A DNA stretch of 21,772 bases from Macrostomum lignano (GCA_002269645.1 NIVC01000652.1:381245-403016); one strand, 5' to 3'; shown: positions 833 through 20,306, counted from the first letter of the stretch. The notes: generated from the letters alone by a model not told the origin. Made by a program: numbers and translations.

Positions 833-1143
833 ATGAGACTTGCGTCAGTGGCATTCATTTTGCTCACCCTCAGCTTGGATGCCACCAGCGGAAAGACGAC
901 AGCGGAATATGGGCAACGAAACCCAAGAGATGGTGGCGCTGCAGCTGGTGGCGCTGCAGCTGGTGGCGCCGATGGGGCCCTGCTCAAACGTGAAACTTTC
1001 GCCAACTTGAAAGACAAACTGCCAAAAACTGTGACGCAACAGTTTTTGCGAAATATTTTTAAACGAAGAAAAGCCTCCTAACAGCACGGTGCCTGGAGTC
1101 CAGCGAACTCGCGTGTCCAGACTTTCGATGCACTCTAGAAAAG
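833..1143 (+). CDS. N-terminal segment: signal peptide MRLASVAFILLTLSLDATSG, a Gly/Ala linker, then a Cys-containing stretch with uncertain frame
   Basis: The first ATG of ORF 785..1081 is at 833 and gives a basic-hydrophobic-small-residue leader. A second frame (1069-1236) reads TKKSLLTARCLESSELACPDFRCTLEK, so the true frame after about position 975 is unresolved. Confidence 0.5.
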
Positions 1144-4100
1144 GTTACAAAGTTTTTTTTTTCTCAACTTAGTCGTCACAAAAAGAAAACTATGCAAAAT
1201 GCAAACTATACCTTGAAAAACGGTATTTGCAAACCTTAATTGTCACAAAGAGTGCACTGACTGCGATAAACCATACGACAGTATGGCCTGCAAAGAGTGT
1301 CGCAACGTCAAAATCAATATCACCAACTTTTGATGATAAAAAAGGTAGCCAAAGATATGACTGTATACCAAGGTGTCCCGTAGGCCATCAAAAAAGCGTG
1401 ACAACAAGTAACCTCTGCGTGCCATGCCCTGCTGGAAGCTACAAATACCAAGAAGGAAATCAAAACTGCATTGTCTGCAACCCAGGAACATTCAGCTCTT
1501 ACAGCACGAGTGGCATAACGGCATGCACCAGTGCCCGGCAGGAAGCATTGCTGACCGAGCCGGGTTAAGCGCCTGCACTAAGTGTCCACCGGGTAGCTTC
1601 GCCAACAAGAAGGGGTCCAAGGAATGCACCAAGTGTCCTGCTGGAAGCGTGTGTACAACGGCGCCTCCGAGCCGACCAAGTGCAAGGCGGGAACGTTTGC
1701 GATCGCCGGATCTAGCAAGTGTACACCGAGTCCACCGGGATCATTCGTCGACAAGACTGGCTCGACAAGCGCTAAACCGTGTCCTGCAGGCACGTGGAGC
1801 GGTAAAGGCGCGGCCGCGTGTACGAACTGCGAGCCTGGAACAATCTCAACTGTCGGCTCTTCGGCATGCACCCAGTGCCCGGCAGGAAGCATTGCTGACC
1901 GAGCCGGGTTAAGCGCCTGCACTAAGTGTCCACCGGGTAGCTTCGCCAACAAGAAGGGGTCCAAGGAATGCACCAAGTGTCCTGCTGGAAGCGTGTGTAC
2001 CAACGGCGCCTCCGAGCCGACAAGTGCAAGGCGGGAACGTTTGCGATCGCCGGATCTAGCAAGTGTACACCGAGTCCACCGGGATCATTCGTCGACAAGA
2101 CTGGCTCGACAAGCGCTAAACCGTGTCCTGCAGGCACGTGGAGCGGTAAAGGCGCGGCCGCGTGTACGAACTGCGAGCCTGGAACAATCTCAACTGTCGG
2201 CTCTTCGGCATGCACCCAGTGCCCGGCAGGAAGCATTGCTGACCGAGCCGGGTTAAGCGCCTGCACTAAGTGTCCACCGGGTAGCTTCGCCAACAAGAAG
2301 GGGTCCAAGGAATGCACCAAGTGTCCTGCTGGAAGCGTGTGTACCAACGGCGCCTCCGAGCCGACCAAGTGCAAGGCGGGAACGTTTGCGATCGCCGGAT
2401 CTAGCAAGTGTACACCGAGTCCACCGGGATCATTCGTCGACAAGACTGGCTCGACAAGCGCTAAACCGTGTCCTGCAGGCACGTGGAGCGGTAAAGGCGC
2501 GGCCGCGTGTACGAACTGCGAGCCTGGAACAATCTCAACTGTCGGCTCTTCGGCATGCACCCAGTGCCCGGCAGGAAGCATTGCTGACCGAGCCGGGTTA
2601 AGCGCCTGCACTAAGTGTCCACCGGGTAGCTTCGCCAACAAGAAGGGGTCCAAGGAATGCACCAAGTGTCCTGCTGGAAGCGTGTGTACCAACGGCGCCT
2701 CCGAGCCGACCAAGTGCAAGGCGGGAACGTTTGCGATCGCCGGATCTAGCAAGTGTACACCGAGTCCACCGGGATCATTCGTCGACAAGACTGGCTCGAC
2801 AAGCGCTAAACCGTGTCCTGCAGGCACGTGGAGCGGTAAAGGCGCGGCCGCGTGTACGAACTGCGAGCCTGGAACAATCTCAACTGTCGGCTCTTCGGCA
2901 TGCACCCAGTGCCCGGCAGGAAGCATTGCTGACCGAGCCGGGTTAAGCGCCTGCACTAAGTGTCCACCGGGTAGCTTCGCCAACAAGAAGGGGTCCAAGG
3001 AATGCACCAAGTGTCCTGCTGGAAGCGTGTGTACCAACGGCGCCTCCGAGCCGACCAAGTGCAAGGCGGGAACGTTTGCGATCGCCGGATCTAGCAAGTG
3101 TACACCGAGTCCACCGGGATCATTCGTCGACAAGACTGGCTCGACAAGCGCTAAACCGTGTCCTGCAGGCACGTGGAGCGGTAAAGGCGCGGCCGCGTGT
3201 ACGAACTGCGAGCCTGGAACAATCTCAACTGTCGGCTCTTCGGCATGCACCCAGTGCCCGGCAGGAAGCATTGCTGACCGAGCCGGGTTAAGCGCCTGCA
3301 CTAAGTGTCCACCGGGTAGCTTCGCCAACAAGAAGGGGTCCAAGGAATGCACCAAGTGTCCTGCTGGAAGCGTGTGTACCAACGGCGCCTCCGAGCCGAC
3401 CAAGTGCAAGGCGGGAACGTTTGCGATCGCCGGATCTAGCAAGTGTACACCGAGTCCACCGGGATCATTCGTCGACAAGACTGGCTCGACAAGCGCTAAA
3501 CCGTGTCCTGCAGGCACGTGGAGCGGTAAAGGCGCGGCCGCGTGTACGAACTGCGAGCCTGGAACAATCTCAACTGTCGGCTCTTCGGCATGCACCCAGT
3601 GCCCGGCAGGAAGCATTGCTGACCGAGCCGGGTTAAGCGCCTGCACTAAGTGTCCACCGGGTAGCTTCGCCAACAAGAAGGGGTCCAAGGAATGCACCAA
3701 GTGTCCTGCTGGAAGCGTGTGTACCAACGGCGCCTCCGAGCCGACCAAGTGCAAGGCGGGAACGTTTGCGATCGCCGGATCTAGCAAGTGTACACCGAGT
3801 CCACCGGGATCATTCGTCGACAAGACTGGCTCGACAAGCGCTAAACCGTGTCCTGCAGGCACGTGGAGCGGTAAAGGCGCGGCCGCGTGTACGAACTGCG
3901 AGCCTGGAACAATCTCAACTGTCGGCTCTTCGGCATGCACCCAGTGCCCGGCAGGAAGCATTGCTGACCGAGCCGGGTTAAGCGCCTGCACTAAGTGTCC
4001 ACCGGGTAGCTTCGCCAACAAGAAGGGGTCCAAGGAATGCACCAAGTGTCCTGCTGGAAGCGTGTGTACCAACGGCGCCTCCGAGCCGACCAAGTGCAAG

Positions 4101-7100
4101 GCGGGAACGTTTGCGATCGCCGGATCTAGCAAGTGTACACCGAGTCCACCGGGATCATTCGTCGACAAGACTGGCTCGACAAGCGCTAAACCGTGTCCTG
4201 CAGGCACGTGGAGCGGTAAAGGCGCGGCCGCGTGTACGAACTGCGAGCCTGGAACAATCTCAACTGTCGGCTCTTCGGCATGCACCCAGTGCCCGGCAGG
4301 AAGCATTGCTGACCGAGCCGGGTTAAGCGCCTGCACTAAGTGTCCACCGGGTAGCTTCGCCAACAAGAAGGGGTCCAAGGAATGCACCAAGTGTCCTGCT
4401 GGAAGCGTGTGTACCAACGGCGCCTCCGAGCCGACCAAGTGCAAGGCGGGAACGTTTGCGATCGCCGGATCTAGCAAGTGTACACCGAGTCCACCGGGAT
4501 CATTCGTCGACAAGACTGGCTCGACAAGCGCTAAACCGTGTCCTGCAGGCACGTGGAGCGGTAAAGGCGCGGCCGCGTGTACGAACTGCGAGCCTGGAAC
4601 AATCTCAACTGTCGGCTCTTCGGCATGCACCCAGTGCCCGGCAGGAAGCATTGCTGACCGAGCCGGGTTAAGCGCCTGCACTAAGTGTCCACCGGGTAGC
4701 TTCGCCAACAAGAAGGGGTCCAAGGAATGCACCAAGTGTCCTGCTGGAAGCGTGTGTACCAACGGCGCCTCCGAGCCGACCAAGTGCAAGGCGGGAACGT
4801 TTGCGATCGCCGGATCTAGCAAGTGTACACCGAGTCCACCGGGATCATTCGTCGACAAGACTGGCTCGACAAGCGCTAAACCGTGTCCTGCAGGCACGTG
4901 GAGCGGTAAAGGCGCGGCCGCGTGTACGAACTGCGAGCCTGGAACAATCTCAACTGTCGGCTCTTCGGCATGCACCCAGTGCCCGGCAGGAAGCATTGCT
5001 GACCGAGCCGGGTTAAGCGCCTGCACTAAGTGTCCACCGGGTAGCTTCGCCAACAAGAAGGGGTCCAAGGAATGCACCAAGTGTCCTGCTGGAAGCGTGT
5101 GTACCAACGGCGCCTCCGAGCCGACCAAGTGCAAGGCGGGAACGTTTGCGATCGCCGGATCTAGCAAGTGTACACCGAGTCCACCGGGATCATTCGTCGA
5201 CAAGACTGGCTCGACAAGCGCTAAACCGTGTCCTGCAGGCACGTGGAGCGGTAAAGGCGCGGCCGCGTGTACGAACTGCGAGCCTGGAACAATCTCAACT
5301 GTCGGCTCTTCGGCATGCACCCAGTGCCCGGCAGGAAGCATTGCTGACCGAGCCGGGTTAAGCGCCTGCACTAAGTGTCCACCGGGTAGCTTCGCCAACA
5401 AGAAGGGGTCCAAGGAATGCACCAAGTGTCCTGCTGGAAGCGTGTGTACCAACGGCGCCTCCGAGCCGACCAAGTGCAAGGCGGGAACGTTTGCGATCGC
5501 CGGATCTAGCAAGTGTACACCGAGTCCACCGGGATCATTCGTCGACAAGACTGGCTCGACAAGCGCTAAACCGTGTCCTGCAGGCACGTGGAGCGGTAAA
5601 GGCGCGGCCGCGTGTACGAACTGCGAGCCTGGAACAATCTCAACTGTCGGCTCTTCGGCATGCACCCAGTGCCCGGCAGGAAGCATTGCTGACCGAGCCG
5701 GGTTAAGCGCCTGCACTAAGTGTCCACCGGGTAGCTTCGCCAACAAGAAGGGGTCCAAGGAATGCACCAAGTGTCCTGCTGGAAGCGTGTGTACCAACGG
5801 CGCCTCCGAGCCGACCAAGTGCAAGGCGGGAACGTTTGCGATCGCCGGATCTAGCAAGTGTACACCGAGTCCACCGGGATCATTCGTCGACAAGACTGGC
5901 TCGACAAGCGCTAAACCGTGTCCTGCAGGCACGTGGAGCGGTAAAGGCGCGGCCGCGTGTACGAACTGCGAGCCTGGAACAATCTCAACTGTCGGCTCTT
6001 CGGCATGCACCCAGTGCCCGGCAGGAAGCATTGCTGACCGAGCCGGGTTAAGCGCCTGCACTAAGTGTCCACCGGGTAGCTTCGCCAACAAGAAGGGGTC
6101 CAAGGAATGCACCAAGTGTCCTGCTGGAAGCGTGTGTACCAACGGCGCCTCCGAGCCGACCAAGTGCAAGGCGGGAACGTTTGCGATCGCCGGATCTAGC
6201 AAGTGTACACCGAGTCCACCGGGATCATTCGTCGACAAGACTGGCTCGACAAGCGCTAAACCGTGTCCTGCAGGCACGTGGAGCGGTAAAGGCGCGGCCG
6301 CGTGTACGAACTGCGAGCCTGGAACAATCTCAACTGTCGGCTCTTCGGCATGCACCCAGTGCCCGGCAGGAAGCATTGCTGACCGAGCCGGGTTAAGCGC
6401 CTGCACTAAGTGTCCACCGGGTAGCTTCGCCAACAAGAAGGGGTCCAAGGAATGCACCAAGTGTCCTGCTGGAAGCGTGTGTACCAACGGCGCCTCCGAG
6501 CCGACCAAGTGCAAGGCGGGAACGTTTGCGATCGCCGGATCTAGCAAGTGTACACCGAGTCCACCGGGATCATTCGTCGACAAGACTGGCTCGACAAGCG
6601 CTAAACCGTGTCCTGCAGGCACGTGGAGCGGTAAAGGCGCGGCCGCGTGTACGAACTGCGAGCCTGGAACAATCTCAACTGTCGGCTCTTCGGCATGCAC
6701 CCAGTGCCCGGCAGGAAGCATTGCTGACCGAGCCGGGTTAAGCGCCTGCACTAAGTGTCCACCGGGTAGCTTCGCCAACAAGAAGGGGTCCAAGGAATGC
6801 ACCAAGTGTCCTGCTGGAAGCGTGTGTACCAACGGCGCCTCCGAGCCGACCAAGTGCAAGGCGGGAACGTTTGCGATCGCCGGATCTAGCAAGTGTACAC
6901 CGAGTCCACCGGGATCATTCGTCGACAAGACTGGCTCGACAAGCGCTAAACCGTGTCCTGCAGGCACGTGGAGCGGTAAAGGCGCGGCCGCGTGTACGAA
7001 CTGCGAGCCTGGAACAATCTCAACTGTCGGCTCTTCGGCATGCACCCAGTGCCCGGCAGGAAGCATTGCTGACCGAGCCGGGTTAAGCGCCTGCACTAAG

Positions 7101-10100
7101 TGTCCACCGGGTAGCTTCGCCAACAAGAAGGGGTCCAAGGAATGCACCAAGTGTCCTGCTGGAAGCGTGTGTACCAACGGCGCCTCCGAGCCGACCAAGT
7201 GCAAGGCGGGAACGTTTGCGATCGCCGGATCTAGCAAGTGTACACCGAGTCCACCGGGATCATTCGTCGACAAGACTGGCTCGACAAGCGCTAAACCGTG
7301 TCCTGCAGGCACGTGGAGCGGTAAAGGCGCGGCCGCGTGTACGAACTGCGAGCCTGGAACAATCTCAACTGTCGGCTCTTCGGCATGCACCCAGTGCCCG
7401 GCAGGAAGCATTGCTGACCGAGCCGGGTTAAGCGCCTGCACTAAGTGTCCACCGGGTAGCTTCGCCAACAAGAAGGGGTCCAAGGAATGCACCAAGTGTC
7501 CTGCTGGAAGCGTGTGTACCAACGGCGCCTCCGAGCCGACCAAGTGCAAGGCGGGAACGTTTGCGATCGCCGGATCTAGCAAGTGTACACCGAGTCCACC
7601 GGGATCATTCGTCGACAAGACTGGCTCGACAAGCGCTAAACCGTGTCCTGCAGGCACGTGGAGCGGTAAAGGCGCGGCCGCGTGTACGAACTGCGAGCCT
7701 GGAACAATCTCAACTGTCGGCTCTTCGGCATGCACCCAGTGCCCGGCAGGAAGCATTGCTGACCGAGCCGGGTTAAGCGCCTGCACTAAGTGTCCACCGG
7801 GTAGCTTCGCCAACAAGAAGGGGTCCAAGGAATGCACCAAGTGTCCTGCTGGAAGCGTGTGTACCAACGGCGCCTCCGAGCCGACCAAGTGCAAGGCGGG
7901 AACGTTTGCGATCGCCGGATCTAGCAAGTGTACACCGAGTCCACCGGGATCATTCGTCGACAAGACTGGCTCGACAAGCGCTAAACCGTGTCCTGCAGGC
8001 ACGTGGAGCGGTAAAGGCGCGGCCGCGTGTACGAACTGCGAGCCTGGAACAATCTCAACTGTCGGCTCTTCGGCATGCACCCAGTGCCCGGCAGGAAGCA
8101 TTGCTGACCGAGCCGGGTTAAGCGCCTGCACTAAGTGTCCACCGGGTAGCTTCGCCAACAAGAAGGGGTCCAAGGAATGCACCAAGTGTCCTGCTGGAAG
8201 CGTGTGTACCAACGGCGCCTCCGAGCCGACCAAGTGCAAGGCGGGAACGTTTGCGATCGCCGGATCTAGCAAGTGTACACCGAGTCCACCGGGATCATTC
8301 GTCGACAAGACTGGCTCGACAAGCGCTAAACCGTGTCCTGCAGGCACGTGGAGCGGTAAAGGCGCGGCCGCGTGTACGAACTGCGAGCCTGGAACAATCT
8401 CAACTGTCGGCTCTTCGGCATGCACCCAGTGCCCGGCAGGAAGCATTGCTGACCGAGCCGGGTTAAGCGCCTGCACTAAGTGTCCACCGGGTAGCTTCGC
8501 CAACAAGAAGGGGTCCAAGGAATGCACCAAGTGTCCTGCTGGAAGCGTGTGTACCAACGGCGCCTCCGAGCCGACCAAGTGCAAGGCGGGAACGTTTGCG
8601 ATCGCCGGATCTAGCAAGTGTACACCGAGTCCACCGGGATCATTCGTCGACAAGACTGGCTCGACAAGCGCTAAACCGTGTCCTGCAGGCACGTGGAGCG
8701 GTAAAGGCGCGGCCGCGTGTACGAACTGCGAGCCTGGAACAATCTCAACTGTCGGCTCTTCGGCATGCACCCAGTGCCCGGCAGGAAGCATTGCTGACCG
8801 AGCCGGGTTAAGCGCCTGCACTAAGTGTCCACCGGGTAGCTTCGCCAACAAGAAGGGGTCCAAGGAATGCACCAAGTGTCCTGCTGGAAGCGTGTGTACC
8901 AACGGCGCCTCCGAGCCGACCAAGTGCAAGGCGGGAACGTTTGCGATCGCCGGATCTAGCAAGTGTACACCGAGTCCACCGGGATCATTCGTCGACAAGA
9001 CTGGCTCGACAAGCGCTAAACCGTGTCCTGCAGGCACGTGGAGCGGTAAAGGCGCGGCCGCGTGTACGAACTGCGAGCCTGGAACAATCTCAACTGTCGG
9101 CTCTTCGGCATGCACCCAGTGCCCGGCAGGAAGCATTGCTGACCGAGCCGGGTTAAGCGCCTGCACTAAGTGTCCACCGGGTAGCTTCGCCAACAAGAAG
9201 GGGTCCAAGGAATGCACCAAGTGTCCTGCTGGAAGCGTGTGTACCAACGGCGCCTCCGAGCCGACCAAGTGCAAGGCGGGAACGTTTGCGATCGCCGGAT
9301 CTAGCAAGTGTACACCGAGTCCACCGGGATCATTCGTCGACAAGACTGGCTCGACAAGCGCTAAACCGTGTCCTGCAGGCACGTGGAGCGGTAAAGGCGC
9401 GGCCGCGTGTACGAACTGCGAGCCTGGAACAATCTCAACTGTCGGCTCTTCGGCATGCACCCAGTGCCCGGCAGGAAGCATTGCTGACCGAGCCGGGTTA
9501 AGCGCCTGCACTAAGTGTCCACCGGGTAGCTTCGCCAACAAGAAGGGGTCCAAGGAATGCACCAAGTGTCCTGCTGGAAGCGTGTGTACCAACGGCGCCT
9601 CCGAGCCGACCAAGTGCAAGGCGGGAACGTTTGCGATCGCCGGATCTAGCAAGTGTACACCGAGTCCACCGGGATCATTCGTCGACAAGACTGGCTCGAC
9701 AAGCGCTAAACCGTGTCCTGCAGGCACGTGGAGCGGTAAAGGCGCGGCCGCGTGTACGAACTGCGAGCCTGGAACAATCTCAACTGTCGGCTCTTCGGCA
9801 TGCACCCAGTGCCCGGCAGGAAGCATTGCTGACCGAGCCGGGTTAAGCGCCTGCACTAAGTGTCCACCGGGTAGCTTCGCCAACAAGAAGGGGTCCAAGG
9901 AATGCACCAAGTGTCCTGCTGGAAGCGTGTGTACCAACGGCGCCTCCGAGCCGACCAAGTGCAAGGCGGGAACGTTTGCGATCGCCGGATCTAGCAAGTG
10001 TACACCGAGTCCACCGGGATCATTCGTCGACAAGACTGGCTCGACAAGCGCTAAACCGTGTCCTGCAGGCACGTGGAGCGGTAAAGGCGCGGCCGCGTGT

Positions 10101-13100
10101 ACGAACTGCGAGCCTGGAACAATCTCAACTGTCGGCTCTTCGGCATGCACCCAGTGCCCGGCAGGAAGCATTGCTGACCGAGCCGGGTTAAGCGCCTGCA
10201 CTAAGTGTCCACCGGGTAGCTTCGCCAACAAGAAGGGGTCCAAGGAATGCACCAAGTGTCCTGCTGGAAGCGTGTGTACCAACGGCGCCTCCGAGCCGAC
10301 CAAGTGCAAGGCGGGAACGTTTGCGATCGCCGGATCTAGCAAGTGTACACCGAGTCCACCGGGATCATTCGTCGACAAGACTGGCTCGACAAGCGCTAAA
10401 CCGTGTCCTGCAGGCACGTGGAGCGGTAAAGGCGCGGCCGCGTGTACGAACTGCGAGCCTGGAACAATCTCAACTGTCGGCTCTTCGGCATGCACCCAGT
10501 GCCCGGCAGGAAGCATTGCTGACCGAGCCGGGTTAAGCGCCTGCACTAAGTGTCCACCGGGTAGCTTCGCCAACAAGAAGGGGTCCAAGGAATGCACCAA
10601 GTGTCCTGCTGGAAGCGTGTGTACCAACGGCGCCTCCGAGCCGACCAAGTGCAAGGCGGGAACGTTTGCGATCGCCGGATCTAGCAAGTGTACACCGAGT
10701 CCACCGGGATCATTCGTCGACAAGACTGGCTCGACAAGCGCTAAACCGTGTCCTGCAGGCACGTGGAGCGGTAAAGGCGCGGCCGCGTGTACGAACTGCG
10801 AGCCTGGAACAATCTCAACTGTCGGCTCTTCGGCATGCACCCAGTGCCCGGCAGGAAGCATTGCTGACCGAGCCGGGTTAAGCGCCTGCACTAAGTGTCC
10901 ACCGGGTAGCTTCGCCAACAAGAAGGGGTCCAAGGAATGCACCAAGTGTCCTGCTGGAAGCGTGTGTACCAACGGCGCCTCCGAGCCGACCAAGTGCAAG
11001 GCGGGAACGTTTGCGATCGCCGGATCTAGCAAGTGTACACCGAGTCCACCGGGATCATTCGTCGACAAGACTGGCTCGACAAGCGCTAAACCGTGTCCTG
11101 CAGGCACGTGGAGCGGTAAAGGCGCGGCCGCGTGTACGAACTGCGAGCCTGGAACAATCTCAACTGTCGGCTCTTCGGCATGCACCCAGTGCCCGGCAGG
11201 AAGCATTGCTGACCGAGCCGGGTTAAGCGCCTGCACTAAGTGTCCACCGGGTAGCTTCGCCAACAAGAAGGGGTCCAAGGAATGCACCAAGTGTCCTGCT
11301 GGAAGCGTGTGTACCAACGGCGCCTCCGAGCCGACCAAGTGCAAGGCGGGAACGTTTGCGATCGCCGGATCTAGCAAGTGTACACCGAGTCCACCGGGAT
11401 CATTCGTCGACAAGACTGGCTCGACAAGCGCTAAACCGTGTCCTGCAGGCACGTGGAGCGGTAAAGGCGCGGCCGCGTGTACGAACTGCGAGCCTGGAAC
11501 AATCTCAACTGTCGGCTCTTCGGCATGCACCCAGTGCCCGGCAGGAAGCATTGCTGACCGAGCCGGGTTAAGCGCCTGCACTAAGTGTCCACCGGGTAGC
11601 TTCGCCAACAAGAAGGGGTCCAAGGAATGCACCAAGTGTCCTGCTGGAAGCGTGTGTACCAACGGCGCCTCCGAGCCGACCAAGTGCAAGGCGGGAACGT
11701 TTGCGATCGCCGGATCTAGCAAGTGTACACCGAGTCCACCGGGATCATTCGTCGACAAGACTGGCTCGACAAGCGCTAAACCGTGTCCTGCAGGCACGTG
11801 GAGCGGTAAAGGCGCGGCCGCGTGTACGAACTGCGAGCCTGGAACAATCTCAACTGTCGGCTCTTCGGCATGCACCCAGTGCCCGGCAGGAAGCATTGCT
11901 GACCGAGCCGGGTTAAGCGCCTGCACTAAGTGTCCACCGGGTAGCTTCGCCAACAAGAAGGGGTCCAAGGAATGCACCAAGTGTCCTGCTGGAAGCGTGT
12001 GTACCAACGGCGCCTCCGAGCCGACCAAGTGCAAGGCGGGAACGTTTGCGATCGCCGGATCTAGCAAGTGTACACCGAGTCCACCGGGATCATTCGTCGA
12101 CAAGACTGGCTCGACAAGCGCTAAACCGTGTCCTGCAGGCACGTGGAGCGGTAAAGGCGCGGCCGCGTGTACGAACTGCGAGCCTGGAACAATCTCAACT
12201 GTCGGCTCTTCGGCATGCACCCAGTGCCCGGCAGGAAGCATTGCTGACCGAGCCGGGTTAAGCGCCTGCACTAAGTGTCCACCGGGTAGCTTCGCCAACA
12301 AGAAGGGGTCCAAGGAATGCACCAAGTGTCCTGCTGGAAGCGTGTGTACCAACGGCGCCTCCGAGCCGACCAAGTGCAAGGCGGGAACGTTTGCGATCGC
12401 CGGATCTAGCAAGTGTACACCGAGTCCACCGGGATCATTCGTCGACAAGACTGGCTCGACAAGCGCTAAACCGTGTCCTGCAGGCACGTGGAGCGGTAAA
12501 GGCGCGGCCGCGTGTACGAACTGCGAGCCTGGAACAATCTCAACTGTCGGCTCTTCGGCATGCACCCAGTGCCCGGCAGGAAGCATTGCTGACCGAGCCG
12601 GGTTAAGCGCCTGCACTAAGTGTCCACCGGGTAGCTTCGCCAACAAGAAGGGGTCCAAGGAATGCACCAAGTGTCCTGCTGGAAGCGTGTGTACCAACGG
12701 CGCCTCCGAGCCGACCAAGTGCAAGGCGGGAACGTTTGCGATCGCCGGATCTAGCAAGTGTACACCGAGTCCACCGGGATCATTCGTCGACAAGACTGGC
12801 TCGACAAGCGCTAAACCGTGTCCTGCAGGCACGTGGAGCGGTAAAGGCGCGGCCGCGTGTACGAACTGCGAGCCTGGAACAATCTCAACTGTCGGCTCTT
12901 CGGCATGCACCCAGTGCCCGGCAGGAAGCATTGCTGACCGAGCCGGGTTAAGCGCCTGCACTAAGTGTCCACCGGGTAGCTTCGCCAACAAGAAGGGGTC
13001 CAAGGAATGCACCAAGTGTCCTGCTGGAAGCGTGTGTACCAACGGCGCCTCCGAGCCGACCAAGTGCAAGGCGGGAACGTTTGCGATCGCCGGATCTAGC

Positions 13101-16100
13101 AAGTGTACACCGAGTCCACCGGGATCATTCGTCGACAAGACTGGCTCGACAAGCGCTAAACCGTGTCCTGCAGGCACGTGGAGCGGTAAAGGCGCGGCCG
13201 CGTGTACGAACTGCGAGCCTGGAACAATCTCAACTGTCGGCTCTTCGGCATGCACCCAGTGCCCGGCAGGAAGCATTGCTGACCGAGCCGGGTTAAGCGC
13301 CTGCACTAAGTGTCCACCGGGTAGCTTCGCCAACAAGAAGGGGTCCAAGGAATGCACCAAGTGTCCTGCTGGAAGCGTGTGTACCAACGGCGCCTCCGAG
13401 CCGACCAAGTGCAAGGCGGGAACGTTTGCGATCGCCGGATCTAGCAAGTGTACACCGAGTCCACCGGGATCATTCGTCGACAAGACTGGCTCGACAAGCG
13501 CTAAACCGTGTCCTGCAGGCACGTGGAGCGGTAAAGGCGCGGCCGCGTGTACGAACTGCGAGCCTGGAACAATCTCAACTGTCGGCTCTTCGGCATGCAC
13601 CCAGTGCCCGGCAGGAAGCATTGCTGACCGAGCCGGGTTAAGCGCCTGCACTAAGTGTCCACCGGGTAGCTTCGCCAACAAGAAGGGGTCCAAGGAATGC
13701 ACCAAGTGTCCTGCTGGAAGCGTGTGTACCAACGGCGCCTCCGAGCCGACCAAGTGCAAGGCGGGAACGTTTGCGATCGCCGGATCTAGCAAGTGTACAC
13801 CGAGTCCACCGGGATCATTCGTCGACAAGACTGGCTCGACAAGCGCTAAACCGTGTCCTGCAGGCACGTGGAGCGGTAAAGGCGCGGCCGCGTGTACGAA
13901 CTGCGAGCCTGGAACAATCTCAACTGTCGGCTCTTCGGCATGCACCCAGTGCCCGGCAGGAAGCATTGCTGACCGAGCCGGGTTAAGCGCCTGCACTAAG
14001 TGTCCACCGGGTAGCTTCGCCAACAAGAAGGGGTCCAAGGAATGCACCAAGTGTCCTGCTGGAAGCGTGTGTACCAACGGCGCCTCCGAGCCGACCAAGT
14101 GCAAGGCGGGAACGTTTGCGATCGCCGGATCTAGCAAGTGTACACCGAGTCCACCGGGATCATTCGTCGACAAGACTGGCTCGACAAGCGCTAAACCGTG
14201 TCCTGCAGGCACGTGGAGCGGTAAAGGCGCGGCCGCGTGTACGAACTGCGAGCCTGGAACAATCTCAACTGTCGGCTCTTCGGCATGCACCCAGTGCCCG
14301 GCAGGAAGCATTGCTGACCGAGCCGGGTTAAGCGCCTGCACTAAGTGTCCACCGGGTAGCTTCGCCAACAAGAAGGGGTCCAAGGAATGCACCAAGTGTC
14401 CTGCTGGAAGCGTGTGTACCAACGGCGCCTCCGAGCCGACCAAGTGCAAGGCGGGAACGTTTGCGATCGCCGGATCTAGCAAGTGTACACCGAGTCCACC
14501 GGGATCATTCGTCGACAAGACTGGCTCGACAAGCGCTAAACCGTGTCCTGCAGGCACGTGGAGCGGTAAAGGCGCGGCCGCGTGTACGAACTGCGAGCCT
14601 GGAACAATCTCAACTGTCGGCTCTTCGGCATGCACCCAGTGCCCGGCAGGAAGCATTGCTGACCGAGCCGGGTTAAGCGCCTGCACTAAGTGTCCACCGG
14701 GTAGCTTCGCCAACAAGAAGGGGTCCAAGGAATGCACCAAGTGTCCTGCTGGAAGCGTGTGTACCAACGGCGCCTCCGAGCCGACCAAGTGCAAGGCGGG
14801 AACGTTTGCGATCGCCGGATCTAGCAAGTGTACACCGAGTCCACCGGGATCATTCGTCGACAAGACTGGCTCGACAAGCGCTAAACCGTGTCCTGCAGGC
14901 ACGTGGAGCGGTAAAGGCGCGGCCGCGTGTACGAACTGCGAGCCTGGAACAATCTCAACTGTCGGCTCTTCGGCATGCACCCAGTGCCCGGCAGGAAGCA
15001 TTGCTGACCGAGCCGGGTTAAGCGCCTGCACTAAGTGTCCACCGGGTAGCTTCGCCAACAAGAAGGGGTCCAAGGAATGCACCAAGTGTCCTGCTGGAAG
15101 CGTGTGTACCAACGGCGCCTCCGAGCCGACCAAGTGCAAGGCGGGAACGTTTGCGATCGCCGGATCTAGCAAGTGTACACCGAGTCCACCGGGATCATTC
15201 GTCGACAAGACTGGCTCGACAAGCGCTAAACCGTGTCCTGCAGGCACGTGGAGCGGTAAAGGCGCGGCCGCGTGTACGAACTGCGAGCCTGGAACAATCT
15301 CAACTGTCGGCTCTTCGGCATGCACCCAGTGCCCGGCAGGAAGCATTGCTGACCGAGCCGGGTTAAGCGCCTGCACTAAGTGTCCACCGGGTAGCTTCGC
15401 CAACAAGAAGGGGTCCAAGGAATGCACCAAGTGTCCTGCTGGAAGCGTGTGTACAACGGCGCCTCCGAGCCGACCAAGTGCAAGGCGGGAACGTTTGCGA
15501 TCGCCGGATCTAGCAAGTGTACACCGAGTCCACCGGGATCATTCGTCGACAAGACTGGCTCGACAAGCGCTAAACCGTGTCCTGCAGGCACGTGGAGCGG
15601 TAAAGGCGCGGCCGCGTGTACGAACTGCGAGCCTGGAACAATCTCAACTGTCGGCTCTTCGGCATGCACCCAGTGCCCGGCAGGAAGCATTGCTGATCGA
15701 GCTGGGTTAAGCGCCTGCACTAAGTGTCCACCGGGTAGCTTCGCCAACAAGAAGGGGTCCAAGGAATGCACCAAGTGTCCTGCTGGAAGCGTGTGTACGA
15801 ACGGCGCCTCCGAGCCGACCAAGTGCAAGGCGGGAACGTTTGCGATCGCCGGATCTAGCAAGTGTACACCGAGTCCACCGGGATCATTCGTCGACAAGAC
15901 TGGCTCGACAAGCGCTAAACCGTGTCCTGCAGGCACGTGGAGCGGTAAAGGCGCGGCCGCGTGTACGAACTGCGAGCCTGGAACAATCTCAACTGTCGGC
16001 TCTTCGGCATGCACCCAGTGCCCGGCAGGAAGCATTGCTGACCGAGCTGGGTTAAGCGCCTGCACTAAGTGTCCACCGGGTAGCTTCGCCAACAAGAAGG

Positions 16101-19100
16101 GGTCCAAGGAATGCACCAAGTGTCCTGCTGGAAGCGTGTGTACGAACGGCGCCTCCGAGCCGACCAAGTGCAAGGCGGGAACGTTTGCGATCGCCGGATC
16201 TAGCAAGTGTACACCGAGTCCACCGGGATCATTCGTCGACAAGACTGGCTCGACAAGCGCTAAACCGTGTCCTGCAGGCACGTGGAGCGGTAAAGGCGCG
16301 GCCGCGTGTACGAACTGCGAGCCTGGAACAATCTCAACTGTCGGCTCTTCGGCATGCACCCAGTGCCCGGCAGGAAGCATTGCTGACCGAGCTGGGTTAA
16401 GCGCCTGCACTAAGTGTCCACCGGGTAGCTTCGCCAACAAGAAGGGGTCCAAGGAATGCACCAAGTGTCCTGCTGGAAGCGTGTGTACGAACGGCGCCTC
16501 CGAGCCGACCAAGTGCAAGGCGGGAACGTTTGCGATCGCCGGATCTAGCAAGTGTACACCGAGTCCACCGGGATCATTCGTCGACAAGACTGGCTCGACA
16601 AGCGCTAAACCGTGTCCTGCAGGCACGTGGAGCGGTAAAGGCGCGGCCGCGTGTACGAACTGCGAGCCTGGAACAATCTCAACTGTCGGCTCTTCGGCAT
16701 GCACCCAGTGCCCGGCAGGAAGCATTGCTGACGAGCCGGGTTAAGCGCCTGCACTAAGTGTCCACCGGGTAGCTTCGCCAACAAGAAGGGGTCCAAGGAA
16801 TGCACCAAGTGTCCTGCTGGAAGCGTGTGTACCGAACGGCGCCTCCGAGCCGACCAAGTGCAAGGCGGGAACGTTTGCGATCGCCGGATCTAGCAAGTGT
16901 ACACCGAGTCCACCGGGATCATTCGTCGACAAGACTGGCTCGACAAGCGCTAAACCGTGTCCTGCAGGCACGTGGAGCGGTAAAGGCGCGGCCGCGTGTA
17001 CGAACTGCGAGCCTGGAACAATCTCAACTGTCGGCTCTTCGGCATGCACCCAGTGCCCGGCAGGAAGCATTGCTGACCGAGCCGGGTTAAGCGCCTGCAC
17101 TAAGTGTCCACCGGGTAGCTTCGCCAACAAGAAGGGGTCCAAGGAATGCACCAAGTGTCCTGCTGGAAGCGTGTGTACCAACGGCGCCTCCGAGCCGACC
17201 AAGTGCAAGGCGGGAACGTTTGCGATCGCCGGATCTAGCAAGTGTACACCGAGTCCACCGGGATCATTCGTCGACAAGACTGGCTCGACAAGCGCTAAAC
17301 CGTGTCCTGCAGGCACGTGGAGCGGTAAAGGCGCGGCCGCGTGTACGAACTGCGAGCCTGGAACAATCTCAACTGTCGGCTCTTCGGCATGCACCCAGTG
17401 CCCGGCAGGAAGCATTGCTGACCGAGCCGGGTTAAGCGCCTGCACTAAGTGTCCACCGGGTAGCTTCGCCAACAAGAAGGGGTCCAAGGAATGCACCAAG
17501 TGTCCTGCTGGAAGCGTGTGTACAACGGCGCCTCCGAGCCGACCAAGTGCAAGGCGGGAACGTTTGCGATCGCCGGATCTAGCAAGTGTACACCGAGTCC
17601 ACCGGGATCATTCGTCGACAAGACTGGCTCGACAAGCGCTAAACCGTGTCCTGCAGGCACGTGGAGCGGTAAAGGCGCGGCCGCGTGTACGAACTGCGAG
17701 CCTGGAACAATCTCAACTGTCGGCTCTTCGGCATGCACCCAGTGCCCGGCAGGAAGCATTGCTGATCGAGCCTGGGTTAAGCGCCTGCACTAAGTGTCCA
17801 CCGGGTAGCTTCGCCAACAAGAAGGGGTCCAAGGAATGCACCAAGTGTCCTGCTGGAAGCGTGTGTACGAACGGCGCCTCCGAGCCGACCAAGTGCAAGG
17901 CGGGAACGTTTGCGATCGCCGGATCTAGCAAGTGTACACCGAGTCCACCGGGATCATTCGTCGACAAGACTGGCTCGACAAGCGCTAAACCGTGTCCTGC
18001 AGGCACGTGGAGCGGTAAAGGCGCGGCCGCGTGTACGAACTGCGAGCCTGGAACAATCTCAACTGTCGGCTCTTCGGCATGCACCCAGTGCCCGGCAGGA
18101 AGCATTGCTGACGAGCGGGTTAAGCGCCTGCACTAAGTGTCCACCGGGTAGCTTCGCCAACAAGAAGGGGTCCAAGGAATGCACCAAGTGTCCTGCTGGA
18201 TATTTTTCTTCGACTTTGAATTCAATAGAATGCACCCCTAGTCCTGCTGGCTATTTTATAAATGGAGTCGGTTCGACCTCCTATAATCCTTGTCCCGTAG
18301 GCACCTGGAGTGGACTTGGTTCAAGTGCGTGTACTGCCTGCATCCCTGGATCATTTTCCTCGTCTGCTGGATCTTCTTCTTGCAGGCGATGTTCTCCTGG
18401 AACTTTTGCTAATTTAACGGCTCAAGTGAGTGCAAACCTTGTCCGCCTGGCAGATACAGCGGCCATAGCGGTGCCTCTTTGTGCGAGTTATGCAATGCAG
18501 GCAGCTGGAGCCGTTCGGGTGCTTTGTCCTGCCGCTTGTGCCCCAAGGGTCATTTTTCGCCTGCTGGATCAAGGCACTGCATTCAATGTTCGGGGGGCAC
18601 TTTTGCAGATCGGGAGGGCACCTCTAGCTGCACGATGTGCCCCCCTGGCAGCGTGGCTGAGGAGCCTGGCTCTACGCGTTGCAGTCTTTGCCGGGTAGGG
18701 CAATACGCGCCAAGCCCTGGTTCAGACAAATGCTTTGATTGTTTCCCTGGCTACTTCACGAACAAAACTGGTAGTAGCACCTGCACGCCTGCCCCCCTGG
18801 CACGCGATCCAGTATTCAGCGGGCTACCGAATGCATACAGTGCAACTTGGAGAACAATTTGTCATATCGATCTGGTATGAGCATATGCGACGAGTGCCCC
18901 GAGTTCGCCCCGACACTCACAAAATATAAATGTTATGGTGAGCTGATTTTATAAATTTATTTTCCGTTTTACTTTTTTGTAGTTAGCTTTTTGGGGACAT
19001 TGTCAACGACTTGACCTGACAGGAGTTTATTGCTAATCGAGCGTCACAAGTTGTGGCCTGAGGCAGTCCCTGTGCCAGTAGGACGGGATACCAGCTTTGG

Positions 19101-19602
19101 AGCTATTTTTAGACATCTGTTCGGGACGGTACTCATAATTTACTTATATTGGAACTTATAAAAACGTGAATAAAAATTATATCCACTTTCCCACCGACAT
19201 TTAGATCGAGTTAATACCGAGTGCTCTTCTAAAGACGGCATATCGAAAACGTGCAGGTATTCTATAGACTTGAATGTGTGGTCGTACGGAGTCGCTTACG
19301 CTGATGGTCCCGGGCGTGACTTTCTGTTTTACACGTTTTCGAAGACAGTTGATATAAAAAAGTTTCTTTTAATGGCAAAGTCAAACGCCAGAAGCAGCGC
19401 AGAGAACTTGAATTTCCGATGCCTGCCATCCGGCAAGGAGAAACACTTCCCAACGTTCAGGCGGTACAATAACTTTGAATGCGCGAATGCGCAAGCAATG
19501 GAGGTCACGCCGAAGCCATATCACAAGGTCATCATTATGAGTTGGCGTTTTTCTATAAAGAGTAGGCAAACGCCGTGCGAAACTGAGTATGCGCTGGATT
19601 AA
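833..19602 (+). CDS. Giant secreted cysteine-rich tandem-repeat protein, about 6,150 aa (composite model; main intron 18938-19204; several single-base indels must be corrected)
   Basis: ATG 833 is followed by a hydrophobic leader. CxxC/CPAG motifs continue through successive reading frames from about 1204 to 18937. The longest intact stretch is in ORF 1968..15710. The phase-1 donor G|GTGAG at 18938 joins in frame to the acceptor at 19204 and an open exon ending at TAA 19600-19602 with overlapping AATAAA. Confidence 0.7.
931..969 (+). repeat. 15-bp minirepeat (TGGTGGCGCTGCAGC x2.6) encoding GGAAA-GGAAA-GGA
   Basis: Read directly from the sequence. The unit length is a multiple of 3 and lies in the signal-peptide frame. 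Confidence 0.9.
1204..1518 (+). CDS. Furin-like (FU) Cys-rich repeat leading into the first CPAG modules; part of the giant gene
   Basis: Removing one T at 1236/1237 and one T at 1328-1331 gives NYTLKNGICKP-NCHKECTDCDKPYDSMACKECRNVKINITNF-DDKKGSQRYDCIPRCPVGHQKSVTTSNLCVPCPAGSYKYQEGNQNCIVCNPGTF. This fits the FU spacing CHxECxxC..C..C..CxxxCPxG..CxxC. Confidence 0.65.
1519..18200 (+). repeat. Coding tandem array, 345-bp unit x about 48.3, each unit a 115-aa module with 12 Cys (GCC2/GCC3- or ephrin-receptor-like CxxCPAG repeats)
   Basis: The marker TTGCGATCGCC occurs 48 times (1697, 2041, 2386...15151 at an exact 345-bp step, then 15495...17910). Unit protein: CTNGASEPTKCKAGTFAIAGSSKCTPSPPGSFVDKTGSTSAKPCPAGTWSGKGAAACTNCEPGTISTVGSSACTQCPAGSIADRAGLSACTKCPPGSFANKKGSKECTKCPAGSV. 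Confidence 0.98.
18201..18937 (+). CDS. Diverged, non-amplified CxxCPxG modules (about 245 aa) continuing the giant protein
   Basis: Reads CPAGYFSSTLNSIECTPSPAGYFINGVGSTSYNPCPVGTW... through ORFs 17910..18698 and 18479..18880. Adding one T near 18431 and one near 18790 makes it continuous to ...CDECPEFAPTLTKYKCY. Confidence 0.75.
18938..19204 (+). other. Putative spliceosomal GT-AG intron (267 nt, phase 1)
   Basis: Donor TATG|GTGAGC, AT-rich sequence after the donor, and acceptor ccactttcccaccgacatttag|. The splice gives TGT TAT G|AT CGA GTT (C-Y-D-R-V) in frame with no correction. Confidence 0.55.
19205..19602 (+). CDS. Putative terminal exon: a 132-aa non-repetitive domain of unknown identity
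   Basis: The frame is open from 19174 to TAA 19602 and includes ORF 19270..19602. It starts at the acceptor in the same phase as donor 18938. Confidence 0.55.
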
Positions 19603-19606
19603 TAAA
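19601..19606 (+). terminator. Candidate polyadenylation signal AATAAA overlapping the stop codon
   Basis: The sequence reads GAT TAATAAAAT and is followed by T-rich downstream sequence. Confidence 0.4.
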
Positions 19607-19838
19607 ATACACAAGACTTGAATGTATAATCAAAATTTTGATTTTGCCTTTCGAGTGAGTCACTCGCATTTTATACTGTGCTGCTAACGACCACCAAGGT
19701 CATACAACTTACAGATTTGGTTTATAGCTTGCACATTCGTGGGGACATTTAATGTGAAAGCGTTTAGTGGTGAAACAGTTCATCGAGGATCCCGACAGTA
19801 CGTTTGCACACGAGCAAATCCCACCGACATGTAGATCC

Positions 19839-20306
19839 TCAGAAAATCATGAAAATTATTTGCAAAGCTTCTGAACACTTCTGCACGCGTAGAATAATTC
19901 ATTCATGGTCGAGAGCCCCAAGGCACAAGAAACGGCGTGTTGGACACTTCAGGCCCCATCAGAAAATCATGAAAATTATTTGCAAAGCTTCTGAACAATT
20001 CTGCACGCGTAGAATTCATTCATGGTCGAGAGCCCCAAGGCACAAGAAACGGCGTGTTGGACACTTCAGGCCCCATCAGAAAATCATGAAAATTATTTGC
20101 AAAGCTTCTGAACACTTCCGCACGCGTAGAATTCATGCATGCGAGAGCCCAAGGCAGAAAAACCGGCGTGTTGGACACTTCAGGCCCCATCAGAAAATCA
20201 TGAAAATTATTTGCAAAGCTTCTGAACAATTCTGCACGAGTAGAATTCATGCATGCTGGAGAGCCTCAAGGCAGAAAAACCGGCGTGTTGGACACTTTAG
20301 GCCCCA
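19839..20306 (+). repeat. Four-copy tandem repeat with units of 120, 117, 114 and 117 bp
   Basis: TCAGAAAATCATGAAAATTATTTGCAAAGCTTCTGAAC starts at 19839, 19959, 20076 and 20190. ORF 19804..20328 stays open across all copies. Confidence 0.93.

What the first reader, a model, noticed from the sequence alone, without database searches (positions are those of the whole stretch)
833..19602. Candidate ~6,150-aa secreted protein with 48 near-identical disulfide modules in a single ~17-kb exon
Seen in sequence: a 115-aa unit repeated about 48 times with no intron-like interruption, plus unique N- and C-terminal caps. Established: CxxCPxG chains (GCC2/GCC3- or ephrin-receptor-like) occur in extracellular proteins and in protist surface antigens, usually as diverged copies. 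Inferred: this is a long disulfide-locked filament for a matrix, cuticle, adhesive or coat, whose length is set by copy number. I do not recognise it as a named gene.
Basis: partly seen in the sequence, partly recalled or inferred. Interest (0 to 1): 0.8.

Follow-up and report, generated by a model that had tools for sequence, protein, structure and literature searches.

The report
Giant repeat-built secreted flatworm protein gene
This is a gene of the flatworm Macrostomum lignano for a roughly 6,100-residue secreted, cysteine-rich protein made of 48 almost identical 115-residue units; published mass spectrometry shows it is made, although 13 single-base errors break its reading frame in this assembly.

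Summary
The 345-bp tandem array is real: 1519-18200, 48.4 copies, of which 38 consecutive copies are 100% identical.

The window is not one open frame. The longest ORF is 4,589 codons. Thirteen single-base indels and two introns separate the ATG at 833 from the stop. Ten of the 13 indels fall on sites that differ between repeat copies or between two UniProt fragments. I read these as long-read consensus errors in a neopolyploid genome, not as pseudogene decay.

The organism is Macrostomum lignano. UniProt fragments A0A1I8JM00 and A0A1I8H4D0 match the 3' end at 100% in blocks.

Two units fold with AlphaFold2 at pLDDT 95. The closest solved structure is the disulfide-ladder stalk of the Chlamydomonas mastigoneme filament protein Mst1.

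Most likely this is a giant, basic, disulfide-laddered secreted rod. Its tissue and role are unknown. It is a new member of a known kind and of moderate interest.

The parts
833..1030 (+). Exon 1: ATG at 833 and a signal-peptide-like N-terminus (MRLASVAFILLTLSLDATSGK...). It contains a 15-bp tandem (931-969) encoding GGAAA repeats. In the window this frame runs on to a stop at 1078-1080.
   Evidence: Direct reading. The exon end at 1030 is inferred from a phase-0 donor ACT|GTGACG at 1031. No homologue was found for this part.
1031..1172 (+). Putative intron 1 (142 nt, GT..AG, with a T10 pyrimidine tract before the AG at 1171-1172).
   Evidence: Inferred only. It is the sole donor/acceptor pair that joins exon 1 in frame to the open frame 3 starting at 1173.
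1173..1518 (+). N-terminal unique cap at the start of the giant exon. Frame 3 is open throughout. 1332-1518 encodes a diverged Ephrin_rec_like module (DDKKGSQRYDCIPRCPVGH...CNPGTFSSYSTSGITAC).
   Evidence: Pfam PF07699 at E 5.6e-7, 29.7 bits. An alternative Cys-rich reading of 1216-1332 needs three +1 shifts and gives only a weak Furin-like hit (E 0.13). This is unresolved.
1519..18200 (+). Tandem array of 48.4 copies of a 345-bp (115-aa) unit. Each unit has 12 Cys (about six CxxCPxG-type hairpin modules), 25% Ser+Thr and net charge +7.
   Evidence: TRF; unit alignment; Pfam Ephrin_rec_like 82 bits; AF2 pLDDT 95.4; unit peptides in published MS data.
2206..15315 (+). Core of the array: 38 consecutive units that are 100% identical in DNA.
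15316..18200 (+). 3' edge units (u40-u48). They carry the only substitutions, C38T, C44T and C140G (unit coordinates), all synonymous third-codon positions. They also carry 7 of the 10 in-array indels.
   Evidence: The indels sit on the same three variable sites (P about 9e-12 by chance).
18201..18937 (+). C-terminal cap: about 245 aa of diverged Ephrin_rec_like modules, still within the giant exon. Two frame breaks lie in it, at about 18415 and 18787.
   Evidence: Pfam PF07699 at E 3e-34 after repair. UniProt fragments P0001/P0064 match at 100% in blocks.
18938..19204 (+). Intron 2 (267 nt, GTGAGC...TTTAG).
   Evidence: P0001 joins ...KYKCY|DRVNTEC... across it; splice sites read directly.
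19205..19565 (+). Last exon: a roughly 120-aa non-repeat C-terminal domain with 4 Cys, no Pfam family and no hydrophobic anchor. The likely true end is ...KVIIMELAFFYKE with TAG at 19563-19565. A missing base at about 19541 makes the window read on to 19602.
   Evidence: Only three weak relatives among 1.84 billion representatives. The AF2 model is unusable (pLDDT 35).
19601..19606 (+). AATAAA polyadenylation-signal-like hexamer about 40 nt after the likely stop.
   Evidence: Direct reading.

Best explanation

Gene layout:
- a signal-peptide exon;
- one giant exon of about 17.8 kb, with a short unique Cys-rich cap, 48 tandem 115-aa units and about 245 aa of diverged modules of the same kind;
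- a last exon encoding a small domain of unknown fold.

Product (conceptual): about 6,100 aa, secreted, no membrane anchor, basic (+7 per unit), 10% Cys and 25% Ser/Thr in the repeat unit.

Shown:
- Each unit is a string of small disulfide-bonded beta-hairpin modules of the Ephrin_rec_like / TNFR-like type.
- A protein carrying this unit is translated.

Inferred:
- The units stack into a long, stiff, disulfide-laddered rod, like the cysteine-rich stalk of the Chlamydomonas mastigoneme protein Mst1. At about 11 A per disulfide rung, that is about 6-7 nm per unit and roughly 0.3 um in all.
- It serves as a structural, probably O-glycosylated, component of a gland secretion or surface coat.

The 13 frame breaks in this window are most likely consensus errors. 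They arise where reads from slightly different repeat copies or paralogous chromosome copies were merged, so that a variable base was dropped or written twice. They do not look like real mutations.

The near-perfect identity of the inner units reflects recent amplification or continuing unequal exchange, possibly sharpened by assembly polishing.
For: Array and unit.

Family: Pfam PF07699 at 82 and 117 bits.

Species and 3' gene structure: P0001 (UniRef100_A0A1I8JM00) and P0064 (A0A1I8H4D0) of M. lignano match 18005-19560 at 100% in blocks and span the intron.

Translation:
- PMC6410801 Dataset S1, sheet Pull_down_Trypsin_1, lists [RNA1310_6488_2] as 'GCC2 and GCC3', 951 aa.
- Its three high-confidence peptides are exact tryptic peptides of the unit.
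- Coverage is 9.25%, which equals 88 of 951 residues, or two copies of each peptide. That is what a short-read transcript with a collapsed array would give.

Coding constraint: all three substitution sites in the array are synonymous (P about 0.015 under neutrality).

Frame breaks as artefacts:
- 8 of 10 in-array indels sit on those three variable sites, as 'neither allele' or 'both alleles' (P about 9e-12).
- The breaks at about 18787 and 19541 fall in the very codons (168 P/A, 329 I/M) where the two UniProt copies differ.
- After 13 single-base repairs the frame is open for 6,044 codons.
- M. lignano is a neopolyploid. About three paralogous copies differ by 1.1% in coding sequence, 93% of read pairs map to multiple loci, and assemblies contain collapsed or mosaic sequences (PMC10733133).

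Structure:
- AF2 on two units gives pLDDT 95.4 and pTM 0.77, all short hairpins.
- By sequence, the best PDB hit is Mst1 8tx1 at E 2.3e-46.
- By fold, Mst1 8wa2/9b4h at E about 4e-14, TM 0.67-0.73.
- The Mst1 cysteine-rich tandem is a spiral disulfide ladder with about 11 A spacing that gives the filament robustness (PMC10602792).

Precedent in the same worm: Mlig-ap2 has 46 long tandem repeats.
Against: - In the window as given, the frame is broken 13 times. Three breaks (about 1527, 2020, 18415) are not at known variable sites.
- This particular copy could be a decaying paralogue while another copy supplies the peptides.
- Translation evidence comes from one sheet of one pull-down, whose list also contains obvious bystanders such as myosin. 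PNA binding is therefore not shown.
- The protein was not found in the stored (truncated) parts of the footprint and tail datasets. No cap peptides were found.
- The N-terminal cap has no homologue anywhere. Its frame and its splice to exon 1 are inferred.
- The signal peptide is judged by eye; no predictor was available.
- The copy number and the 38 identical units cannot be checked without reads.
- Rod geometry and length come from analogy with Mst1; I could not measure the model.
- Tissue and function are unknown.
Confidence: 0.75

Rival explanations
1. Decaying pseudogene or coding-derived satellite. One intact 345-bp unit of a dead gene was recently amplified, the frameshifts at the edges and in the caps are real, and this copy makes no product.
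For: - There are 13 frame breaks in about 4 kb of edge and cap sequence, against none in the 13-kb core.
- A long ORF is expected from repeating any stop-free unit, and the minus strand has one too.
- The neopolyploid genome holds spare copies that could decay.
Against: - Exact unit peptides are detected by MS.
- The substitutions are all synonymous.
- Indels pile up on the variable sites as dropped or doubled alleles, which fits a technical signature better than mutation (P about 9e-12).
- UniProt models from another assembly read through the same places in frame.
Confidence: 0.1
2. The gene is real but the array as drawn is an assembly construct. The true copy number and inter-copy variation differ materially from 48 copies with 38 identical ones, because reads within the array cannot be placed and polishing converges on the consensus.
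For: - The core is perfectly identical while edges and flanks are error-rich.
- Indels at variable sites show that reads from different copies were merged.
- Published statements say M. lignano assemblies contain collapsed or mosaic sequences.
- The earlier assembly's gene models start inside the last unit.
Against: - Arrays of 46 long repeats are documented in this species, and parts of that gene were cloned and Sanger-sequenced (Mlig-ap2).
- A 16.7-kb array is within the span of single long reads.
- This rival changes the length, not the nature, of the protein.
Confidence: 0.3
3. Membrane-bound variable surface antigen or receptor (Giardia VSP / ciliate immobilisation-antigen style, or ELAPOR/Eph-like) rather than a secreted structural rod.
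For: The C-terminal cap gives a weak Giardia VSP match (E 1e-4, 21.7 bits, below the 31.4 cut-off). ELAPOR1 and TNFR matches appear.
Against: - No transmembrane or GPI-like hydrophobic tail appears in either possible C-terminus.
- No kinase, MRH or other receptor domain was found in the caps.
- The organism is an animal, not a protist.
- The copies are identical, not diversified.
Confidence: 0.05

Closest known systems
Chlamydomonas reinhardtii mastigoneme protein Mst1 (PDB 8tx1, 8wa2, 9b4h), cysteine-rich tandem at residues about 1480-1780
   Same: It is the best sequence match (E 2.3e-46; unit residues 2-158 against Mst1 1610-1772) and the best fold match (E about 4e-14, TM 0.67-0.73) among solved structures. 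Both are an extracellular chain of Ephrin-receptor-CRD-like hairpins forming a ladder of disulfides that stiffens a filament.
   Different: Mst1 has nine Ig-like domains before the tandem and a hydroxyproline-rich polyproline-II helix after it. It has only about six diverged cysteine-rich domains and polymerises on algal cilia. The flatworm protein has none of those parts (Pfam finds only Ephrin_rec_like-type hits in the caps). It has 48 identical units and comes from an animal. Polymerisation is untested.
Macrostomum lignano adhesion proteins Mlig-ap1 and Mlig-ap2 (PMC6410801)
   Same: Same species. Both are giant secreted Cys-rich proteins with long arrays of near-identical tandem repeats (Mlig-ap2: 21 x 255 aa plus 25 x 221 aa). 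Like Mlig-ap1, the repeat region here is strongly cationic. This protein appears in the same study's PNA pull-down list.
   Different: It lacks vWD, TIL, LDL-receptor, TSP-1, C-type lectin and EGF domains and KR-rich regions. Its unit differs (115 aa, Ephrin_rec_like). It was not seen in the stored parts of the footprint and tail proteomes.
Animal Ephrin_rec_like / TNFR-like cysteine-rich domain proteins (Eph receptor CRD, ELAPOR1/2, SCUBE, SVEP1, TNFR superfamily)
   Same: Same Pfam family and hairpin/disulfide module. ELAPOR1 (9vqm) matches at E about 2e-8 by sequence and 2e-5 by fold; TNFR and Eph CRDs match weakly.
   Different: Those proteins carry a few diverged modules within multidomain receptors or matrix proteins. 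Here there are about 300 modules as 48 identical units, with no receptor or other known domains.
Protist CXXC-rich surface antigens (Giardia VSP; ciliate immobilisation antigens with near-identical central repeats)
   Same: CxxC periodicity, and, from my own knowledge of ciliate antigens, very similar tandem central repeats.
   Different: The VSP match is below threshold, there is no membrane anchor, and the host is an animal.

Membership tests
Ephrin_rec_like (Pfam PF07699, formerly GCC2_GCC3) repeat proteins | Profile match above Pfam's gathering score | tested here: met
   Two units score 82.3 bits, the C-cap 116.9 bits and the N-cap 29.7 bits, against a cut-off of 23.1.
Ephrin_rec_like (Pfam PF07699, formerly GCC2_GCC3) repeat proteins | Small disulfide-bonded beta-hairpin fold shared with Eph-receptor and TNFR cysteine-rich domains | tested here: met
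   The AF2 model has pLDDT 95.4 and only short hairpins. Foldseek hits Mst1, ELAPOR1, TNFR and Eph CRDs. There is an even number of Cys (12) per unit.
Mastigoneme protein Mst1 family | Cysteine-rich Ephrin-CRD-like tandem forming a disulfide ladder | tested here: met
   E 2.3e-46 by sequence, TM 0.67-0.73 by fold; described in PMC10602792.
Mastigoneme protein Mst1 family | Nine N-terminal Ig-like domains | tested here: not met
   Pfam scans of exon 1 and the N-cap find no Ig-like domain. The N-cap has no homologues.
Mastigoneme protein Mst1 family | C-terminal hydroxyproline-rich polyproline-II helix | tested here: not met
   The C-cap and last exon are not Pro-rich and have no such match.
Mastigoneme protein Mst1 family | Self-assembly into a filament on cilia | not testable with these tools
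   Needs EM or localisation.
Flatworm duo-gland adhesive proteins (Mlig-ap1/ap2 type) | vWD / TIL / TSP-1 / LDL-receptor / C-type lectin / EGF domain set, or KR-rich regions | tested here: not met
   Only Ephrin_rec_like, NCD3G and TNFR-type matches; architecture as given in PMC6410801.
Flatworm duo-gland adhesive proteins (Mlig-ap1/ap2 type) | Present in adhesive footprints and expressed in adhesive gland cells | tested here: inconclusive
   Unit and cap peptides and the transcript id are absent from the stored parts of Datasets S2 and S3, but those files are truncated. No in situ data were found.
Flatworm duo-gland adhesive proteins (Mlig-ap1/ap2 type) | Giant secreted protein with long near-identical tandem repeats | tested here: met
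   48.4 x 115 aa, compared with 46 repeats in Mlig-ap2.
Giardia-type variant surface proteins | VSP profile match and C-terminal transmembrane anchor | tested here: not met
   PF03302 scores 21.7 bits against a cut-off of 31.4. There is no hydrophobic C-terminus.
Non-coding satellite DNA | No coding constraint and no product | tested here: not met
   Exact unit peptides in MS data; all three variable sites are synonymous; strong domain match.

The most novel reading that the evidence does not exclude
The protein is an animal counterpart of the mastigoneme-type disulfide-ladder filament: a cationic rod about 0.3 um long, secreted by one of the PNA-positive glands of the worm (frontal, pharyngeal, adhesive or cement glands, or the antrum/eggshell). 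It would act as a so far unrecognised structural or cohesive component of flatworm adhesive or mucus. Its length would be set by a copy number that is kept perfectly homogeneous (38 identical 345-bp units) by ongoing unequal exchange in a neopolyploid genome.
Probability: 0.15. Interest if true: 0.7.

Novelty: new member of a known kind. Interest (0 to 1): 0.45.

Why it matters
Macrostomum lignano is a laboratory model for bioadhesion, regeneration and sexual selection. Its two known adhesive proteins are also giant tandem-repeat proteins.

This gene is absent as a whole from public protein sets. Only two 337-aa fragments cover its 3' end, and the short-read transcript is collapsed to 951 aa. 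A roughly 6,100-aa, highly cationic, disulfide-laddered secreted protein has therefore gone unnoticed, although its peptides are already in a published dataset.

If it proves to be a gland or surface filament, it adds a component to models of flatworm secretions. It would also offer a very regular, modular, disulfide-stiffened rod for biomaterials work.

The locus is also a clear example of a technical problem. Long-read consensus in a polyploid genome drops or doubles bases at sites where copies differ. The resulting false frameshifts hide real genes from annotation.

Tried and rejected
- Minus-strand 4,538-codon ORF: rejected as a by-product of repetition. It has no significant Pfam match, and the peptides and domain match are on the + strand. 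Two of the three substitutions are silent in that frame too, so the synonymy test does not separate the strands.
- Homology search with exon 1 plus the N-cap: no hit at all.
- Look-up of the contigs that encode P0001 and the 4,580-aa window ORF: nothing on record.
- Last-exon domain: no Pfam hit. Only three weak hits among 1.84 billion representatives. The best (E 1e-5) is a repeat protein with a Cu/Zn-SOD-like domain. AF2 with a 5-sequence alignment failed (pLDDT 35), so no fold search was run and the fold stays unknown.
- Identity with Mlig-ap1 or Mlig-ap2: rejected on domain content.
- Expression site: 'Macrostomum lignano' with 'ephrin', 'Macrostomum' with 'GCC2' and 'repeat', and 'RNA1310_6488' alone all return no paper. 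The id is absent from the eLife 2016 supplements. Cap peptides are absent from the stored PNAS supplements.
- Alternative Cys-rich reading of 1216-1332: only a weak Furin-like hit (E 0.13). Left unresolved.
- The 'intron' 18327-18608 used by the UniProt models: I regard it as a predictor's way around the frameshift at about 18415. The skipped stretch encodes regular Ephrin_rec_like modules.


Full report
**1. What is in the sequence**

Tandem Repeats Finder reports a single array at 1519-18200 with period 345 bp, 48.4 copies and 99% matches. I cut the array at a 21-nt anchor and aligned all units to their consensus. Units 2-39 (2206-15315; 38 copies, 13,110 bp) are identical to the last base. 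Every difference lies in the first two and the last nine units.

The array is 60.6% G+C and the flanks are 41-44%. One frame of the unit is stop-free and gives a 115-aa unit with these properties:
- 12 Cys;
- 29 Ser+Thr;
- 11 Lys + 1 Arg against 2 Asp + 3 Glu, so a net charge of +7.

So the repeat, its period, its copy number and its caps are real, and chance is not an issue.

**2. The window is not one ORF**

The + strand is open only in pieces:
- frame 1, 1597-2254;
- frame 3, 1941-15708 (4,589 codons);
- frame 2, 15395-16742 and 16745-18134;
- frame 3, 17781-18696.

The minus strand has a 4,538-codon open frame as well. Repeating any stop-free unit gives a giant ORF, so ORF length is not evidence. 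The minus-frame product has no significant Pfam match.

Following the coding frame through the window takes 13 single-base repairs:
- eight in units u0-u47, at about 1527, 1655, 2020, 15453, 16731, 16832, 17522 and 17773;
- two in the partial last unit, at about 18112 and 18117;
- two in the C-terminal cap, at about 18415 and 18787;
- one in the last exon, at about 19541.

After these repairs and removal of the intron 18938-19204, the frame is open for 6,044 codons from 1173 to a TAG at 19563-19565. Exon 1 (833-1030) can be joined in phase through a GT..AG interval at 1031-1172, which would give about 6,110 aa. That join is inferred.

**3. Are the frame breaks real?**

Three lines of evidence say most are not.

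- (a) The only substitutions in the array are at unit positions 38, 44 and 140. All three are third-codon, synonymous changes (GAC>GAT, GCC>GCT, ACC>ACG). Eight of the ten in-array indels sit on exactly these three sites. Either the variable base is missing ('neither allele') or both alternatives are written side by side ('both alleles', for example ACCG at 16832 and the extra T at 17773). If an indel could fall anywhere in the unit, the chance of this is about 9e-12.
- (b) Two UniProt fragments from another M. lignano assembly (P0001, P0064) read through the 18112/18117, 18787 and 19541 sites in frame. The breaks at 18787 and 19541 fall in the very codons where those two copies differ from each other (168 P/A, 329 I/M). 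The window string is what remains if the variable base is deleted.
- (c) M. lignano is a neopolyploid. It has about three paralogous copies per locus, differing by 2.2% overall and 1.1% in coding sequence. 93% of read pairs map to multiple loci, and its assemblies are described as containing collapsed or mosaic sequences (PMC10733133).

Merging reads from slightly different copies during long-read consensus is known, from general experience with such assemblies, to drop or double bases at the differing sites. The perfectly uniform core offers no such sites, which explains why it is error-free while the edges and caps are not.

Three breaks (about 1527, 2020, 18415) are plain homopolymer-length changes with no known variant. 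The possibility that this particular paralogue is decaying cannot be excluded without reads.

**4. Whose gene it is**

A search with the repaired C-terminal cap returned a 337-aa 'Ephrin_rec_like domain-containing protein' of Macrostomum lignano (P0001 = UniRef100_A0A1I8JM00, with sister entry A0A1I8H4D0). It matches the window at 100% in blocks from 18005 to 19560.

It also suggests the true C-terminus ...KVIIMELAFFYKE.

The model starts inside the last repeat unit. It skips 18327-18608 as an 'intron'. That stretch encodes regular modules and contains the break at about 18415, so I take the skip to be a predictor's work-around.

The next-best relatives of the unit are only 31-36% identical (Chlorella, metagenomes). 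The N-terminal cap has no relative at all. No public protein covers the array.

**5. Family and fold**

Pfam results:
- PF07699 Ephrin_rec_like (formerly GCC2_GCC3): two units at E 2e-23 (82 bits, cut-off 23.1), the C-cap at E 3e-34, the N-cap at E 6e-7;
- overlapping matches to NCD3G and to TNFR-type (TNFR_ELAPOR1_6th, TNFR_c6) models.

AlphaFold2 on two tandem units with an 18-sequence alignment gave mean pLDDT 95.4 and pTM 0.77. The model consists only of short beta-hairpins.

Against the PDB:
- The best sequence match is the Chlamydomonas mastigoneme protein Mst1 (8tx1; E 2.3e-46; unit residues 2-158 against Mst1 1610-1772), followed by ELAPOR1.
- Foldseek agrees: Mst1 8wa2/9b4h at E about 4e-14 and TM 0.67-0.73, ELAPOR1 at about 2e-5, and TNFR and Eph cysteine-rich domains more weakly.

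In Mst1 this tandem is described as similar to the Eph-receptor cysteine-rich domain. It forms a spiral ladder of disulfides about 11 A apart that gives the extracellular filament its robustness (PMC10602792).

By analogy, six disulfides per unit would give about 6-7 nm per unit and about 0.3 um for 48 units. This is inference; I could not measure the model. The protein is not a member of the Mst1 family, because the Ig-like domains and the polyproline helix are absent.

**6. It is translated**

That peptide is already published. Dataset S1 of Wunderer et al. 2019 (PMC6410801) holds peanut-agglutinin lectin pull-downs from M. lignano. Its sheet Pull_down_Trypsin_1 lists protein [RNA1310_6488_2], annotated 'Pfam: GCC2 and GCC3, score 148.1', 951 aa, pI 8.7. 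It has three high-confidence peptides:

| Peptide | XCorr |
|---|---|
| cPAGSVcTNGASEPTK | 4.42 |
| TGSTSAKPcPAGTWSGK | 3.97 |
| AGTFAIAGSSK | 2.75 |

All three are exact tryptic peptides of the unit. The stated coverage, 9.25%, equals 88 of 951 residues. That is two copies of each peptide, as expected for a short-read transcript in which the array collapsed to about two units between the caps.

This shows that a transcript and a protein carrying this unit exist. It does not show specific PNA binding:
- the same list contains myosin;
- the entry appears once in the stored text;
- the protein and its cap peptides were not found in the stored, truncated parts of the footprint and tail datasets.

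PNA labels the adhesive, pharyngeal and frontal (types 1, 2, 4) glands, the antrum, developing eggs and sometimes the cement glands (PMC4890501). That is the list of candidate tissues if the binding is real. I found no expression-site data.

**7. What it most likely is and does**

Shown:
- It is a M. lignano gene whose unit is translated.
- It has a signal-peptide-like start (by inspection) and no membrane anchor in either possible C-terminus.
- It has 48 units of a known extracellular disulfide module.

Inferred: the product is a very long, stiff, cationic, probably O-glycosylated rod that serves as a structural or cohesive element of a secretion or coat. The same worm makes Mlig-ap1 (cationic, cohesive) and Mlig-ap2 (46 long tandem repeats) on the same design principle. 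This protein shares none of their domains.

Rivals are a decaying paralogue or satellite (about 0.1), a real gene with a mis-drawn array (about 0.3, compatible with the main reading) and a membrane antigen or receptor (about 0.05).

**8. Novelty and verdict**

The domain family is well known, giant tandem-repeat secreted proteins are known in this very species, and fragments of this gene and its peptides are already in public data, though uncharacterised. The full architecture is new: about 6,100 aa, 48 units of which 38 are identical, a unique orphan N-cap and a C-terminal domain of unknown fold. So is the link to the mastigoneme-type disulfide ladder.

I rate it a new member of a known kind, with interest about 0.45. 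The most useful practical outcome is the list of 13 positions where the assembly probably needs correction, together with a target for in situ and RNAi work.

Noticed in passing
window 21607-21772, minus strand: The end of a neighbouring gene runs off the window. It encodes ...EIDRQNSQLERMSVKTDKTNAKMDEQNTQMNRILYGSKAPPAAKK*, which matches the C-terminal SNARE motif of SNAP-25 in the PDB (E about 7e-4).
   Followed up: partly
window 19839-20306: A 117-bp tandem repeat, 4 copies, 91-93% identical, sits about 270 bp downstream of the gene's likely stop. Its function is unknown. The 174-aa 'ORF' at 19804-20328 is probably another repeat artefact.
   Followed up: no
window 20619-21037: Nested inverted repeats (20619-20642/21014-21037 at 88% and 20666-20687/20977-20998 at 95%) bracket about 290-370 bp. 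This is a hairpin or MITE-like element in the intergenic region.
   Followed up: no
window 931-969: A perfect 15-bp tandem (TGGTGGCGCTGCAGC x 2.6) lies inside exon 1 and encodes GGAAAGGAAAGG just after the signal peptide.
   Followed up: no
window 1216-1332: Frame 3 is open here. Three successive +1 shifts (frame 3 to 1 to 2 to 3, at homopolymers A5, TT and T4) would instead give a cysteine-rich reading, ...NGICKPNCHKECTDCDKPYDSMACKECRNVKINITNF..., with a weak Furin-like match (E 0.13). Frame 2 ends in three consecutive stop codons at 1331-1339. Which reading is real is unresolved.
   Followed up: partly
window 1519-18200 versus the caps: The array is richer in G+C (60.6%; GC3 63%) than the unique coding parts of the same gene (GC3 28-57%) and the flanks (41-44%). 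GC-biased gene conversion in a frequently recombining array is one possible cause. This was not tested.
   Followed up: no
window 19207-19542 (last exon): The C-terminal domain has no Pfam family. Its only relatives among 1.84 billion representatives are three weak hits. The best is a multi-repeat protein with Cu/Zn-superoxide-dismutase-like domains, sharing T-x-C...W-x-Y-G...F-x-L...R. The AF2 model was unusable (pLDDT 35).
   Followed up: partly
PMC6410801 Dataset S1 (not in the window): Several other 'GCC2 and GCC3' proteins (for example RNA1310_25452 and RNA1310_1237.1) appear in the same PNA pull-down sheet. Secreted Ephrin_rec_like proteins may therefore be a recurrent, possibly O-glycosylated, class in this worm.
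   Followed up: no
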